Source of the DNA: Octopus sinensis
Taxonomy: Eukaryota
DNA length: 64,000 nt
Direction of reading: 5' to 3'
Assembly (NCBI RefSeq): GCF_006345805.1
Contig: NC_042997.1
Span: 107,384,001 to 107,448,000 of the forward strand
Position 1 is the first letter of the stretch; every line of letters starts with the position of its first letter. Positions 20,601 through 26,600 of the stretch are shown piece by piece. Both the position numbers and the translations under genes were made by a program. A model generated the notes under the pieces. It made no database searches and was not told the DNA's origin. It saw only the letters and a list, made by a program, of their open reading frames with translations.

Positions 20601-23600
20601 TTATAATCGAAGAAACAAAGACAGGAATGTCATGGCTAGAATGCCTTTTATGATAGTCATCATGGCAGGCTTGGTGCCAAGTAACAACAATGAAATCAGC
20701 CATTTCATTCCTTTGATTGCAAACTGCCCAAATAATTAAGTTTGTCTCATTGAGCAAGTTGAAACTTGCAAAGTAAAACAAAGATTTGGGAAGGAAATGT
20801 CAAACTGTCGATGATGTTCACAAGTCAAAAATGGTTTGGTTGCCACATTCTTTGATTCTGTGACAATCAGTCTGCACAAGTCTTTGCCTTTAACATCTTA
20901 GACTAGAGATGAAGTAAAGATTTATCCATATATTTTCTTACTTTAAGTTCCATGCTTTCTGCAGTTGCATGTTCTTCTTAGCCACTTTACCGAGGCCATT
21001 GGGTGCATTTAATTTTTTGTGGCAATCAGACTAGGGAGGTTCTCGTGTGTTTAACAAGACTGCACCTCATCAACAATGTACTCTGGGTGCCTTTCTTCTC
21101 CCATTAAGCATGACACCCAGATCGTTATACATTCACCCGGCATCTTGTATGACTAACAGTCATTGATAACTATTGCATGATGTGACAATGTTGTGACACA
21201 CACACACATGCACATGCATCATCATCATTGTTTTAGAATCCACTTTTTCCCTGCGTAACAAGATTAGATGTAAATTAAAAAAACAATATTTTGTGTTGTA
21301 ATGTTTGTTGTTATTTTCCTCTTTTTTTTTATTCTTTTTCCAAATTTTAGTGCAGATTTCATTGACGAAGAAAATATAATTAAAAAGCTCTGTTCTTATG
21401 TTTGTCCCTGGAGTTGTGAGAAAGATGGAAACTTAGTTCCCTTTCCAAAGAGTTCAGGTGAGTAAATTTGTGCAAATCATTTCAGTCAGTTGAGAATGTA
21501 TTTGTATTTTAAAAGTGTTAATTAAGTCTAAAATAAAGTCCTAAATATTATTCTTTTCAAATTGATAATAATGCTAATTTTTGGTTTTACTAGATCTGAC
21601 TGAGCAGGAAAAATATATTTTGACTCAGCTGCCCAAGAAACAATGTATCCTTCGTTTATTTTTACTGTTGTTGTTTACAATTTTTTACTGTTCTTGTTCA
21701 TTTGCCATGTTAAAATATTCTATCAATTATTTATCATAAAGATAAAATGTATGTGTAAGGGTCTAGCTTGACCCTGCCTAAGATTTGAAACCAAATCCAC
21801 CGGCTTGTTGCTTGTCAAAACGAGCGGGAAATCTTCCACACTAGATGATTGAGGAAACACTCCACCCCCTAGGACCTGTATTGGTCAAGGAAAGGTCAAT
21901 CCTTTGTTTAAGGTTTGACCTACATTACTGACCACAGCCTATATAACAGAATTTTCTATCTCTTCCTCTGATGTGTCAGCTATGACCAAGGAACAACACT
22001 TAGATATCAGCCAGACCAAGGGGCAGCACCCGCTTTTGCATCAGCCTTAACCAAGAGCAGCACTTCCCTTTGCTCAACATGCAAAGAGAGGCTTTCGGTC
22101 GTAAGAAAGGCGATGCTGCCTTTATCCTTTCTTGTCAGCACCATGACTACCTTACTCTTTCCCTCTCTACTAACAGACAACCTTTTTCTACAGAGCTACT
22201 GCTAACCAGCGTGTCATCCTTGTCATCACTATCACTAGAATTGCTACTGTCTCTATAACAACCTGTCGGGTAAACGAATAAATATATGTAAATAACATTT
22301 CTTCCTTCTTGGAGTTAATTCTTCGATGTTCATTGGTTACTCTGACGTGAGAACCTTGAAGTGTTACATTTACACGCTACGTTTAGTAGTGGGCTGTATC
22401 ATATCAAATTGATATGGCACATCGCAAGAAGCCTGCTACATATGTTTCTTTGATCTCGAAAGCTTTAGATTTAAAGCAATTGATGAGAAAAAGACCTCCT
22501 GGTTAGAATTCTTGCCTACTGTTGCTTCCATTTCTTGACCTCTTGGTGAAGTAAAGTATTTGGGATTAAATGTTGAGGAATACCATAAATATGTTTGGTA
22601 GGAACAAACTTCGGTTGACTCCGGATCTGTTGCTTTAATTCTCTACATGAAGTTTGGTGCTTTGCCTCTGTTGTTGATATTCTTATCAGATCTAAACTGT
22701 TGATTGTGGCAATGAGCTTTTAGCAATGTCAAAAGTTACACTATTGATCTATTCTGTGAATTAACAATAAAGGGTTTAATTAATGTAGTTGAGGACTATG
22801 ATGTCTCTTATTCATCATAGTCCTCCAGGCAATAACAGAGGAATTAAGACAAGCTGCCCCTGGGAGCTCCTCTATGCTGATGACCTTGCTCTAATTGCTG
22901 AGTCACTACCAGAACTATAGGAAAAGTTTCAGGTGTGGAAGTAAGGTCTAGAATTGAAGGGCCTTGGAGTCAATGTAACAAAAACTAAAGTATTAGTAAG
23001 TAGGAAGGCAGACAACCCACAAATCCCTTCAGGTAGATGGCCCTGCTTGATCTGTAGAAAAGGTGTAGGTAGAAACTCTATAAATGTACCCAGTGTAAGC
23101 TATGGACACATAAGAGATGCAGCAATATCAGAGGAAGGCTAACTGGGAAGATAGTTTTGTATGTGGCAAATGCTTCTGTCACATTCCAGGGAGGAAAACT
23201 AGAAGTAGTTGATAGCTTCCGTTACCTAGGTGACCAAGTCAGTAGCAGGAGTGGATGCTCTGAAAGTGTAGCTGCTAGAATAAGAATAGCCTGGGCAAAG
23301 TTCAGAAAGCTTCTACCCCTACAGGTGACAAGGGGCCTCTTGCTCAGAGTAAAAGGTAGACTGCATGACGCATGTGTACAAACAGCCATGCTACATGGCA
23401 GTGAAAGATGGGCTGTGACTACTGAGAACATGCATAAGCTTGCAAGGAATGGAGCGAGTATGCTCTGCTGGATGTGTAATGTCAGTGTGCATACACCACA
23501 GAGTGTAAGCGCCCTGAGAGAAAAGTTGGATTTAAGAAGCATCAGATGAGGTGTGCAAGAGAGACAACTGCACTGGTATAGTGATGTCTTGCGATGAATG

Positions 23601-26600
23601 AGGATAGCTGTATGAAAAAGTTTCACACCCTAGCAGTTGAGGGAACTTGTGGAAGGGGTAGACCCAGGAAAACCTGGGATGAGTTGGTGAAGCATGACCT
23701 TTGAACATTGGGCCTTACTCAGGCAATGACTAGTGACCGGAACCTTTGGAGATATGCTGTACTTGAGAAGACCTGACAAGCCAAGTGAGACCATAGCCCA
23801 TGGCCTATGCCAGTGGGTGTAACCAGCCCATTTATGAATACCCTTCATTCATTGGGCAATAAACCTTGCTTGTGAAGACCTATTGAGGTAAGTGGAATCA
23901 AAATCAAAATTGCTGATGTGGCTGATGACAGTACTGCCTGATTGGCAATTGTGCCAGTGGGATATTGAAAGCACATCTGAGCATGATCATTGCCAGGGCC
24001 ATGGATTGGTTCCTGTGCTGGTGGCATGTAAAAAGCACCATTTGAGCATGATTTTTGCCTTACCGGCACATGTGCTGGTGGCACATGAAAAGCAACATTC
24101 AAGCATGGTCATTGCCAGTGCTGCCAGACTGGCTCCTGTGCAGGTAACATGTAAAAACACCTTTTGAGTGTGAGTGTGGTCGTTGTCAGAACCACCTGAC
24201 TGGCCCTTGTTCCGGTGGCATGTAAAAAGCACCCACTACACTCTCAGAGTGGTTGGCGTTAGGAAGGGCATCCAGCTGTAGAAACTTTGCCAGACCAGGT
24301 TGAGCCTGGTGCAGCCTCTGGCTCACCAGTCCTCAGTCAAACCGTCCAACCCATGCCAGCATGGAAAGCGGACGTTAAACGATGAAGATGATGATGATGA
24401 TTGTTTACTCAATTTCTAATATTGAATTTTGTTTCAATTGTTTCAGTGTTTAACAAAAGGTAATTTTCAAGATGACTGAGTGGACTGCTGCTAATTCAGA
24501 GGTCATAAGTTCAAGTCTGTTGCTGGCATTTCTAGTCAGAAAACTTTTATTATTCACAATTGTCATCTCTCACTTGCCTTTCCAGAAATAGGTCCCGCAT
24601 CCTTTGGGAATTACTGGTATTTCATTCAGGGACAGGTTTGTCTCTTATCAACTTAGTGAATTATAAAAACACAAATTTCTGTAACAAAAAAAAACTCTTA
24701 ATTTTGTTTTCTGTTTATTTTGTGATTATTGTTATTCCTTATCAAAGTTCAGATCTTTTAGATAATCCAAAAGATGTCATGTCTGTTTACTTAGGTCTTG
24801 TAGACATTCTTTTTGCATATTCATACGATGTTCGCACAACAGAAGGAGAGAAAACTGTAAGTGTTCAACATATTTTGATTAATGTTTGTGAGAAATGTCC
24901 AATATATGGTTGTTTATACTCAATTGTTAATCAGATTATCTTTTGCAACCATTTCTGTCTGAAAACTATAAATTTTCCTCCTTTCATACAAGGCTTGAAA
25001 ATAAACCAAAAGAGATGGGCTTGAAGCTGCAATGACTCCTAGATAATGACTAAACGTTGTTTAGTAAACTTTCTGTTGTTATATTGAGGTTAGATTAATC
25101 TGTTACTAAACCGTTTCTGTTCACTACAATTCATTTGTTATTATTGTGTAACCCTAAAAGTGTAACCCTCTGAGATGTGATCTATTATTCAAGCACTTAT
25201 CCAAATGTCTATTTTCCAGGCTTGTATGATTTGGACAGCATCTTTTTCCAGCCCAGCATCTCAGCCACTTGTTGCTGTCCATTTTCAATTTCTTTGCAAG
25301 GTTCAAATTCTTGAAATCTACTTCCACCATTTCTTCTTCATCTTCCACAGGTTCTTTCCTCTTAGATGGCTTGGCTCTTCTTTACCTGTCATCTGCCATA
25401 CAGTCTTTTCTTTTTCGACACCATATCTCATTCCTTTTGGCTCATTCATGCTCTGTTGCTCATGTACACTTATATTACACATCCAGCAGGGCATGTTTGC
25501 CTCCTTTCTTCCAAGCTTCTACACATTCTCTACAATCGGTGTCCATCTTTTGCCACCATACAACATCACACTTCATACACAGCCACCATACAAAGTAACT
25601 TTTCCTGTGTTTCGTTGATCACTCTCTGCCGTCATATATTTAATTGCACCTTCAACTGTATGGCTGTCAATTTCAACAGCCGCTGGTCCCTGTGTCGGAG
25701 CAGACTCTCTTGTTTGTATTCTGCTTGTTGAGTAACCACTCGTTAACATCTTCATACCTCTTTTTGCAAACGTCCATGAAGGGAAGTGATTTGTGAATGT
25801 TGCCAAAGCTCATCATCTTTATTTATGTTGATACACTCCACTTCTCTCTTTTTTTCCCCCATTCTTTTGAAGCATGTCTTTTAGCTCTCTCTACAGTTCC
25901 ATTCCTTTGAGATCTGTCTTTTAGCTCTCTCTCTACAGTTCCACCACTATTCCCACTTTCTGTCTGAATCCCTTTTCCATCTAAAGATCTGCTATGTGGT
26001 TTGCAGCGTGCCAGTGGCACGTAAAAAGCACCAACTGATCGTGGACGCTGCCAGCCTCCCCTGGCACCTGTGCCGGTGGCATGTAAAAAGCACCCACTAC
26101 ATTCAGAGTGGTTGACGTTAGGAAGGGCATTCAGCTGTAGAAACACTGCCAGATCAGATGAGCCTGGTTGAACCGTCCAACCCGTGCTAGCACGGAAAAC
26201 GGACGTTAAACGATGATGATGATGTATTCTTAATTTCCCTCTTTCTCCTTTTTCTTATCAGATGTGTCACATCACATGTTTTTGTGCCTCTTTAAGGAAT
26301 CTTTCATCTTCCATCTCTTCTTTCTCCAGATTGTCTTATGTCTTTCAGTCCATTTAGCTCTTGTCCTGACATCACTGATCGGCATTGAGTGCCATATTTT
26401 TCATCAGGAAAGAACACAGTATTTGCAGCCAATTGTGGCTTGTGTATTTACCATGTTGTCGGATGGTTTGCTGATGTTAGTGTTACGATTGGCTTGGGCA
26501 TTTGCATCTCAGAAGAGTCTGGGACTCCCCATTCTTTGTACCATATCTGTAACCTCTATACAAACCAGTGGCCATCATGATGTCCATATTGCACTCAATT

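What the first reader, a model, noticed from the sequence alone, without database searches (positions are those of the whole stretch)
21645..24752. SHQ1 intron 8 appears to be a minor-spliceosome (U12-type) intron
Seen: the only donor of 13 that is not GTRAG/GTAAT-like reads GTATCCTTC. The acceptor has TTCCTTATC ending 9 nt before AG with no pyrimidine tract between, and the junction restores conserved K-x-YLLD. Known: U12 consensus is RTATCCTT with TTCCTTRAC close to the 3'SS, and such introns can be rate-limiting. Inferred: H/ACA RNP (and telomerase) assembly here is tied to minor-spliceosome activity. The branch site deviates (ATC versus AAC).
Basis: partly seen in the sequence, partly recalled or inferred. 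Interest (0 to 1): 0.74.

Follow-up and report, generated by a model that had tools for sequence, protein, structure and literature searches.

The report
U12-type intron in octopus SHQ1
Intron 8 of the Octopus sinensis SHQ1 gene has the sequence marks of a rare minor-spliceosome (U12-type) intron. The same intron sits at the same codon in clams, oysters and several unidentified animals, so it is a real, old, but otherwise ordinary member of a well-known intron class.

Summary
The window is Octopus sinensis. My 14-exon SHQ1 model translates exactly to RefSeq XP_029639621.1, so 21644/24753 is the annotated junction.

Intron 8 (21645-24752, phase 1) starts AAT|GTATCCTTC. It carries TTCCTTATC 9 nt before exon 9, with no pyrimidine tract in between. 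The other 12 donors are GTAAG, GTGAG or GTAAT.

- **Donor score:** against matrices built from 166 published mouse and human minor-intron sites, the donor scores +14.8 bits as U12 and -0.3 bits as U2. It is the best of 7198 GT sites in the window.
- **Branch site:** the score is modest (8.0 bits, 11th percentile), but TCCTTATC occurs in catalogued minor introns.
- **Comparison:** an intron splitting the same Tyr codon is U12-type GT-AG in two other octopuses, a clam and an oyster. It is AT-AC with TCCTTRAY in about 20 distinct metagenomic animal sequences, and AT-AA in another group, where a spliced mRNA-like contig confirms the excision.
- **Other lineages:** three unknown eukaryotes have a U2-type intron there. 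Ostrich, insect-like contigs and Rhizopus have none, and SHQ1 is absent from the human and mouse minor-intron lists.

Verdict: a U12-type intron, a new member of a known kind. The proposed regulatory link to H/ACA RNP assembly is untested.

The parts
2560..37404 (+). SHQ1 coding region, 14 exons: 2560-2634, 5565-5632, 7079-7137, 14805-14933, 19081-19256, 20119-20231, 21351-21457, 21594-21644, 24753-24856, 28439-28492, 29111-29234, 30306-30426, 33718-33757, 37180-37404 (includes the stop)
   Evidence: tblastn with mollusc and other SHQ1 proteins. Splice sites and an intact 481-aa ORF. Identical to XP_029639621.1. Pfam SHQ1-like CS domain at residues 3-93 and SHQ1 domain at 241-419.
21594..21644 (+). 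Exon 8 (51 nt), encoding DLTEQEKYILTQLPKKQ plus the first base of the Tyr codon
21645..24752 (+). Intron 8, 3108 nt, phase 1, GT-AG, U12-type by sequence
21645..21653 (+). 5' splice site GTATCCTTC, with -1 T (AAT|GTATCCTTC)
   Evidence: +14.8 bits on a U12 GT-AG donor matrix built from 122 MIDB donors, the 40th percentile of that set. -0.3 bits on a U2 matrix. Best of 7198 GT sites in the window. The MIDB table gives 97.5/100 to AATGTATCCTTG, mouse Rpl4.
24735..24743 (+). Branch-site-like motif TTCCTTATC. The candidate branch adenosine is A24741, 11 nt from the last intron base. The usual second A is replaced by T24742.
   Evidence: 8.0 bits, 11th percentile of 166 MIDB branch sites. Such a match at distance 8-16 is found at 0.38% of AG sites. 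TCCTTATC is present in catalogued minor introns such as mouse Cfap44 and human SLC35E3. Identical in O. vulgaris and O. bimaculoides.
24750..24752 (+). 3' splice site CAG. The AG at 24746-24747 is only 6 nt from A24741 and is out of frame.
24753..24856 (+). Exon 9 (104 nt), encoding (Y)LLDNPKDVMSVYLGLVDILFAYSYDVRTTEGEKT
22700..24635 (.). Interspersed-repeat DNA filling the interior of intron 8. About 23476-24635 is absent from the O. bimaculoides intron.
   Evidence: blastn: more than 30 fragments of this element elsewhere in the window. The O. bimaculoides intron (2054 nt) aligns to intron positions 1-1831 and 2992-3108 only.

Best explanation
Intron 8 of Octopus sinensis SHQ1 (21645-24752) is a GT-AG U12-type intron. 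The proposed mechanism, from established knowledge of minor splicing, is as follows. U11 snRNP and later U6atac pair with the donor GTATCCTT. U12 snRNA pairs with TTCCTTATC close to the 3' end, most likely bulging A24741. The CAG 11 nt downstream is chosen by distance rather than through a pyrimidine tract. Exon 8 is then joined to exon 9, restoring the Tyr codon of K-K-Q-Y-L-L-D in the SHQ1-specific domain. The intron is old. It sits at the same codon and phase, with U12-type signals, in bivalves and in several other animal lineages, where it is AT-AC or AT-AA. It has been converted to U2-type or lost elsewhere, including in vertebrates. What is shown: the sequence signals, the junction, the orthology and the conservation. 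What is inferred: actual use of the minor spliceosome and the identity of the branch nucleotide.
For: (1) Junction. The 14-exon model translates exactly to RefSeq XP_029639621.1, and the O. vulgaris and O. bimaculoides annotations have the same junction. Organisms without this intron read straight through K-x-Y-L-L-D: L001, ostrich, Rhizopus and insect-like contigs.
(2) Donor. U12 +14.8 bits, U2 -0.3 bits, a difference of +15.1, versus -14 to -39 for the 12 other introns. It ranks first of 7198 GT sites.
(3) Branch site. 8.0 bits at the right distance, which is rare at random AG sites (0.38%). By additivity of the published MIDB scores I estimate about 74.7, above that paper's cut-off of 65.
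(4) Phase 1 and -1 T fit the known U12 biases.
(5) Orthologues. O. vulgaris is identical. O. bimaculoides has GTATCTTTC with the same 3' end. The clam Ruditapes has GAAT|GTATCCTTC...ATTCTTAACTTTTACTAAG|AT. The oyster Saccostrea has GAAT|GTATCTTTT...AACCTTAATGACACAAG|AT.
(6) Metagenome contigs. About 19 distinct sequences plus L028 have AAT|ATATC...TCCTTRAY-like motif...YAC|AT at the same codon (ATATCCTT in the 19, ATATCTCA in L028). L056 has GTATCCTCA...ATCCTTAAC...CAG. A further group has ATATCCTT...ACCTTAAC...AA|, and a spliced mRNA-like contig (L009) matches its exons at 95-100% across exactly this junction.
(7) Molluscs retain minor introns orthologous to human ones (PMC11347168).
Against: There are no RNA reads, branch-point mapping or minor-spliceosome perturbation data for octopus, so the classification rests on sequence alone. 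The branch site lacks the canonical second adenosine and scores only at the 11th percentile of known sites. An equally good branch-site-like match (TAATTCTTAACA, 8.1 bits) occurs at the clearly U2-type intron 2, so the 3' motif alone is weak evidence. A T-rich stretch upstream of the motif could in principle serve U2AF. The U2 donor matrix I used was typed from textbook frequencies, and the U12 matrices come from a 166-site sample of mouse and human introns, not molluscs. Conservation among the three octopuses is uninformative because the flanking intron is also 80-88% identical.
Confidence: 0.93

Rival explanations
1. It is an ordinary U2-type intron with a weak donor that resembles the U12 consensus by chance. 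The T-rich stretch upstream of TTCCTTATC would act as the pyrimidine tract.
For: GT-AG termini. A T-rich tract at about 24700-24740. A U12-like branch motif of equal score occurs by chance at U2-type intron 2. Three GTATCCTT sites in the window is about what base composition predicts.
Against: The donor scores -0.3 bits as U2, versus 3.4-13.2 for the other 12, and pairs with U1 only at GUA. The chance that one of 13 real donors is GTATCCTT is about 0.5%. The same codon carries U12-type donors in clam, oyster and many other animals, including AT-AC forms that the major spliceosome handles poorly.
Confidence: 0.03
2. It is a hybrid intron that either spliceosome can remove, so SHQ1 output is not strictly dependent on the minor spliceosome.
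For: Published work reports sites spliced by both systems (abstract of PMC10853781). The branch site is suboptimal. The upstream T-rich tract is present in octopus but not in clam or oyster.
Against: The donor is a full U12 consensus with no U1 complementarity beyond GUA. Nothing in the data shows major-spliceosome use.
Confidence: 0.04
3. The junction is not as annotated. For example, the in-frame AG at 24760-24761 could be used, removing L-L-D, or another donor could be used.
For: ATCTTTTAG|AT, 9 nt downstream, is an in-frame acceptor preceded by a T run. No RNA reads were available to me.
Against: Y-L-L-D is conserved in every SHQ1 aligned. It is read without interruption in intron-less homologues. 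Three independent octopus annotations use 24753. No other GT lies in exon 8. The downstream AG is 20 nt from A24741, outside the 11-13 nt optimum cited.
Confidence: 0.02

Closest known systems
GT-AG U12-type (minor) introns of mouse and human minor-intron-containing genes, as catalogued in MIDB (Olthof et al. 2019, PMC6717393)
   Same: The donor is the same. The catalogue has AATGTATCCTTG for mouse Rpl4, scored 97.5/100. Branch site variant TCCTTATC occurs there (mouse Cfap44 TTCTCCTTATCA 74.3, human SLC35E3 TTATCCTTATCC 70.7). Also shared: a short branch-site-to-3'ss distance, no pyrimidine tract in between, -1 T and a non-zero phase.
   Different: The host gene differs: SHQ1 is absent from the mouse and human lists, while the controls MAPK8 and DERL2 are present. 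The organism is a cephalopod. Minor-spliceosome dependence has not been shown experimentally.
Orthologous SHQ1 intron in bivalves (Ruditapes philippinarum L005 7599-8595; Saccostrea echinata L004 6058-6274)
   Same: Same codon (Tyr split T|AT), same phase, GT-AG termini, GTATCCTTC or GTATCTTTT donors, and TTCTTAAC or CCTTAAT 9-11 nt from the 3' end.
   Different: The bivalve branch sites keep the AA pair and have no T-rich tract upstream. Their introns are 217-997 nt, against 3108 nt in octopus, which is inflated by repeats.
AT-AC U12-type introns (the classic 'ATAC' class), here the SHQ1 intron of about 20 unidentified metagenomic animals
   Same: Same position and phase. ATATCCTT donor and TCCTTRAY 13-16 nt before the 3' end.
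   Different: The terminal dinucleotides are AT-AC (or AT-AA in group B) rather than GT-AG. This is the subtype switching already described for U12 introns (general knowledge; class conversion is discussed in PMC7367187).
GAR1 minor intron of mammals
   Same: It is another H/ACA RNP gene carrying a minor intron. The mouse entry is TTTGTATCCTTT / TTTTCCTTAATT, scored 96/93.
   Different: It is a different gene and position, and the human entry scores much lower. No evidence links the two cases.

Membership tests
U12-type (minor-spliceosome) intron | 5' splice site |RTATCCTT | tested here: met
   GTATCCTTC at 21645. +14.8 bits on the U12 matrix, the 40th percentile of 122 catalogued GT-type minor donors. 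Best of 7198 GT sites in the window.
U12-type (minor-spliceosome) intron | Branch-point sequence TCCTTRAY | tested here: met
   TCCTTATC has one mismatch, at the usual branch A. It scores 8.0 bits (11th percentile of 166 catalogued sites). The estimated MIDB-scale score is about 74.7, above the cut-off of 65. The same octamer occurs 10 times in the MIDB table. The feature is met by score threshold, not by strict consensus.
U12-type (minor-spliceosome) intron | Branch site close to the 3' splice site (optimum 11-13 nt) | tested here: met
   A24741 lies 11 nt before the last intron base, 24752.
U12-type (minor-spliceosome) intron | No pyrimidine tract between branch site and 3' splice site | tested here: met
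   The intervening bases are AAAGTTC. A T-rich tract lies upstream of the motif, which is not part of the definition.
U12-type (minor-spliceosome) intron | Orthologous introns in other lineages are U12-type (evolutionary persistence, subtype switching) | tested here: met
   Clam, oyster and two other octopuses are GT-AG U12-type. About 20 metagenomic animal sequences are AT-AC, group B is AT-AA and L056 is GT-AG.
U12-type (minor-spliceosome) intron | Host organism has a minor spliceosome | not tested
   No snRNA gene was found in the window (Rfam). The literature states that mollusc orthologues of human minor introns are mostly minor (PMC11347168).
U12-type (minor-spliceosome) intron | Excision depends on U11, U12, U4atac and U6atac | not testable with these tools
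   This needs knock-down or compensatory-snRNA experiments.
U2-type (major) GT-AG intron | Donor complementary to U1 (MAG|GTRAGT) | tested here: not met
   AAT|GTATCC scores -0.3 bits, versus 3.4-13.2 bits for the other 12 introns of the gene. The U2 matrix was typed from textbook frequencies.
SHQ1 (H/ACA RNP assembly factor) gene | N-terminal CS domain plus SHQ1-specific domain | tested here: met
   PF21413 at residues 3-93 (E 1e-30) and PF04925 at 241-419 (E 1e-65). Exact match to XP_029639621.1.

The most novel reading that the evidence does not exclude
The SHQ1 intron at the K-x-Y|LLD codon is an ancestral animal U12-type intron, possibly older given the U2-type introns at the same site in unknown eukaryotes. 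It has been kept for more than half a billion years in molluscs and other invertebrates because slow minor splicing throttles SHQ1, and through it dyskerin/H/ACA RNP and telomerase assembly. On this reading, vertebrates lost it and carry the dependence in GAR1 instead.
Probability: 0.1. Interest if true: 0.5.

Novelty: new member of a known kind. Interest (0 to 1): 0.3.

Why it matters
U12-type introns make up well under 1% of animal introns, and each one makes its host gene dependent on the minor spliceosome. SHQ1 is not a minor-intron gene in human or mouse, and no paper in the searchable library links SHQ1 with U12 splicing. This therefore adds an H/ACA RNP and telomerase assembly factor to the set of minor-spliceosome targets in molluscs and other invertebrates. 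One locus also shows the whole known life history of such introns: GT-AG, AT-AC and AT-AA subtypes, conversion to U2-type, and clean loss. It does not change how minor splicing is understood. Any classifier such as intronIC run on a mollusc annotation should find this intron, and curated multi-species databases may already list it.

Tried and rejected
- The first protein search, with the 52-aa exon 8+9 peptide, found a single 53-aa hit. That hit still proved useful as an intron-less homologue (L001).
- Genomic loci for Mactra and Dysidea SHQ1 were not on record.
- The held IAOD supplement has no gene lists. PMC7507305 and PMC11347168 have no supplements held as text.
- Paper searches for SHQ1 with 'minor intron' or 'U12' returned only unrelated papers.
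- An Rfam scan of the window found nothing.
A narrower one worked.
- An exact look-up of the L009 protein, meant to identify the host of group B, failed. The host organisms of all metagenome contigs therefore remain unidentified, and I do not name them.
- Conservation of the splice signals among the three octopus species was set aside as evidence, because the neighbouring intron sequence is equally conserved.
- L055 has TTCCTTATC near its acceptor, but its intron is in another phase with a GTTAGC donor, so I did not count it as an orthologue.
It served only to seed word matches to vertebrate proteins, and all hits were then scored by HMMER.
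Full report
**What is in the window**

The + strand between 2560 and 37404 carries a complete SHQ1 gene. I located the exons by tblastn with SHQ1 proteins from a clam (Mactra), a sponge and an unnamed transcript, then fixed the boundaries at splice sites. The result is 14 exons, 13 GT-AG introns and an uninterrupted 481-codon reading frame.

The translation is identical over its full length to XP_029639621.1, 'protein SHQ1 homolog isoform X1 [Octopus sinensis]'. The same 90% cluster holds the O. vulgaris and O. bimaculoides proteins. 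Pfam finds the SHQ1-like CS domain at residues 3-93 and the SHQ1 domain at 241-419.

**The observation**

Exon 8 (21594-21644) ends ...CCCAAGAAACAAT, and the intron starts GTATCCTTCG. The intron ends ...gttaTTCCTTATCaaagttcag, and exon 9 starts ATCTTTTAGAT at 24753. Joining them gives L-P-K-K-Q-Y-L-L-D, with the Tyr codon split T|AT (phase 1).

The other twelve donors are GTAAG (nine), GTGAG (two) and GTAAT (one). One detail needs adjusting: the motif ends 7 nt before the AG, which is 9 nt before the exon. A T-rich stretch also lies upstream of the motif.

**Scoring**

No intron classifier was available. I took 166 donor and 166 branch-site 12-mers of catalogued mouse and human minor introns from the supplementary table of Olthof et al. 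2019 (PMC6717393) and built position matrices from them.

Donor results:
- The intron 8 donor AATGTATCCTTC scores +14.8 bits against the window's base composition. That is the 40th percentile of the 122 GT-type reference donors.
- On a U2-type donor matrix, typed from textbook frequencies and therefore approximate, it scores -0.3 bits.
- The U12-minus-U2 difference is +15.1 bits. The other twelve introns give -14 to -39 bits.
- Of 7198 GT dinucleotides on both strands of the window, this is the highest-scoring one. Only three sites carry GTATCCTT, about what base composition predicts, so the rate is roughly 4 in 10,000 per GT site.

Branch-site results:
- The best branch-site window, TATTCCTTATCA, scores 8.0 bits, the 11th percentile of the reference set.
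- Its adenosine at 24741 lies 11 nt from the intron end, inside the 11-13 nt optimum quoted in that paper.
- A match this good at a distance of 8-16 nt precedes only 0.38% of the 8104 AG sites in the window.
- The 3' motif alone is not decisive. The clearly U2-type intron 2 has TAATTCTTAACA at 8.1 bits.

TCCTTATC occurs ten times in the published table, for example in mouse Cfap44 (score 74.3) and human SLC35E3 (70.7). That paper's scores are linear sums, so I could estimate our sites on its scale. The donor comes to about 97.5 (mouse Rpl4 AATGTATCCTTG is 97.50, and the last position carries no weight). The branch site comes to about 74.7, above the cut-off of 65 that the paper uses together with the donor criterion.

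Phase 1 and a T at -1 also fit the known biases of GT-AG U12-type introns (PMC7367187).

**Comparison with annotated genomes**

This is the strongest evidence.
- **O. vulgaris:** the intron ends are identical to the window.
- **O. bimaculoides:** the donor is GTATCTTTC and the 3' end is unchanged. GTATCTTT is itself a catalogued minor donor, with 35 occurrences. These three species say little, because the neighbouring intron sequence is also 80-88% identical.
- **Clam (Ruditapes philippinarum):** the same Tyr codon is split by GAAT|GTATCCTTC...ATTCTTAACTTTTACTAAG|AT.
- **Oyster (Saccostrea echinata):** the same codon is split by GAAT|GTATCTTTT...AACCTTAATGACACAAG|AT. Neither bivalve has a pyrimidine tract there.

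**Comparison with metagenome contigs**

A scan of metagenome contigs with the exon 8-9 peptide returned 65 loci from unidentified eukaryotes. They fall into these classes:
- **AT-AC, U12-type:** about 19 distinct sequences of one group (peptide LLKLPRKE|YLLD). They have AAT|ATATCCTT at the donor, TCCTTAAC, TCCTTGAC, TCCTTAAT or TTCTTAAC 13-16 nt before the end, and YAC|AT at the acceptor. This is the classic AT-AC signature at exactly this codon. One further AT-AC sequence, L028, has a less canonical donor, ATATCTCAC.
- **GT-AG, U12-type:** L056, an 86-nt intron with GTATCCTCA...ATCCTTAAC...CAG.
- **AT-AA:** a second group (LRRLPNKD|YLLD), with ATATCCTT...ACCTTAAC...AA|.
- **U2-type at the same site and phase:** three unknown eukaryotes with short introns starting GTAAGT, GTGAGA or GTAAAC.
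- **No intron:** many contigs, including an insect-like group.

For the AT-AA group, contig L009 is a spliced, full-length SHQ1 mRNA-like sequence. It matches the exons of genomic contig L052 at 95-100% identity and joins them precisely at this site. That is RNA-level support for excision of the homologous intron.

The intron is also absent from ostrich, where octopus exons 8 and 9 form one exon while the flanking intron positions are kept. It is absent from Rhizopus and from the unknown animal L001. In line with this, SHQ1 does not appear in the mouse or human minor-intron lists, although the controls MAPK8 and DERL2 do.

**Interpretation**

The intron is a GT-AG U12-type intron. The mechanism in this paragraph is inferred from established knowledge of minor splicing. 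U11, and later U6atac, recognises GTATCCTT. U12 pairs with TTCCTTATC, probably bulging A24741. The CAG 11 nt downstream is selected by distance, and the nearer AG at 24746-24747 is too close.

The history at this one site follows the known pattern for the class: an old U12-type intron, subtype switching between AT-AC and GT-AG, conversion to U2-type in some lineages, and loss in others (for the class-conversion model).

The interior of the octopus intron is mostly interspersed repeat. It includes about 1.16 kb that is absent from O. bimaculoides.

**The functional corollary**

If the intron is U12-type, SHQ1 mRNA production in octopus needs the minor spliceosome. A subset of such introns is known to be spliced slowly (abstract of PMC4066798). 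Whether this one is rate-limiting, or matters for H/ACA RNP or telomerase assembly, was not tested.

The intron is dispensable in vertebrates, insect-like organisms and fungi. In mammals a different H/ACA gene, GAR1, is listed as a minor-intron gene. This is worth noting but proves nothing.

**Novelty and score**

No paper in the searchable library connects SHQ1 with U12 splicing, and the gene is not a minor-intron gene in human or mouse. Even so, this is a routine member of a well-understood class in a phylum known to keep minor introns. Standard classifiers would call it, and multi-species databases that I could not read may already hold it.

I rate it a new member of a known kind, interest 0.3, with 0.93 confidence in the U12-type classification. 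The remaining doubt is that no octopus RNA or perturbation data were available and that the branch site is suboptimal.

Noticed in passing
PMC6717393 supplementary tables (not in the window): GAR1, a core H/ACA RNP protein, is listed as a minor-intron-containing gene in mouse (TTTGTATCCTTT / TTTTCCTTAATT, scores 96/93) and, much more weakly, in human. SHQ1, DKC1, NAF1 and NHP2 are not listed.
   Followed up: partly
window 28439-28492 (exon 10): RefSeq isoform X2 (XP_036359413.1, 463 aa) lacks exactly the 18 residues VESGWTVAKLSSTLSCFE encoded by the 54-nt exon 10. This indicates an in-frame exon-10-skipping isoform inside the SHQ1 domain.
   Followed up: no
window 24753-24761: ATCTTTTAG|AT gives an in-frame alternative acceptor 9 nt into exon 9. 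Using it would delete L-L-D. It lies 20 nt from the candidate branch A. There is no evidence that it is used.
   Followed up: no
window 7055-7078 (3' end of intron 2): TAATTCTTAACATTTCACAG has a U12-like branch motif (8.1 bits, right distance), although intron 2 has a strong GTAAGT donor. This shows that the 3' motif alone gives false positives in this AT-rich genome.
   Followed up: yes
window 31282-31293 (+, inside intron 12) and 19192 (-): Two further full GTATCCTT matches (CAGGTATCCTTC and ACTGTATCCTTA) that are not at any exon boundary of the model. Their number is about what chance predicts.
   Followed up: partly
window 22700-24450 and more than 30 other places (e.g. 436-1504, 34777-35880, 55746-56820, 58105-59343): An abundant interspersed repeat on both strands. 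It contains short ORFs with no Pfam family above threshold. One copy fills much of intron 8, and about 1.16 kb of it is missing from the O. bimaculoides intron.
   Followed up: partly
window 49178-50161 (+): A 328-codon open frame with mariner-type transposase domains (PF01359 at E 6e-24, plus weaker sub-threshold DDE_3 and HTH matches). It is probably a Tc1/mariner element copy.
   Followed up: no
downstream of SHQ1, minus strand (seen in L002 32722-33593 and L003 37092-37957): In O. bimaculoides and O. vulgaris the next gene, convergent with SHQ1 and starting about 130 nt after it, encodes a borealin-like protein (PF10444, PF10512). I did not check this in the window itself.
   Followed up: no
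L029, L037, L050, L052 (metagenome contigs) and L009: The homologous SHQ1 intron of one unidentified animal group starts ATATCCTT and appears to end in AA rather than AC or AG. The boundary is ambiguous by 2 nt. L009 is a spliced mRNA-like contig of the same or a very close species.
   Followed up: partly
L011, L043/L044, L057/L058 (metagenome contigs): Short (60-71 nt) U2-type introns (GTGAGA, GTAAAC, GTAAGT) split the homologous codon in the same phase in three unknown eukaryotes. Either the intron position predates animals or these are U12-to-U2 conversions.
   Followed up: partly
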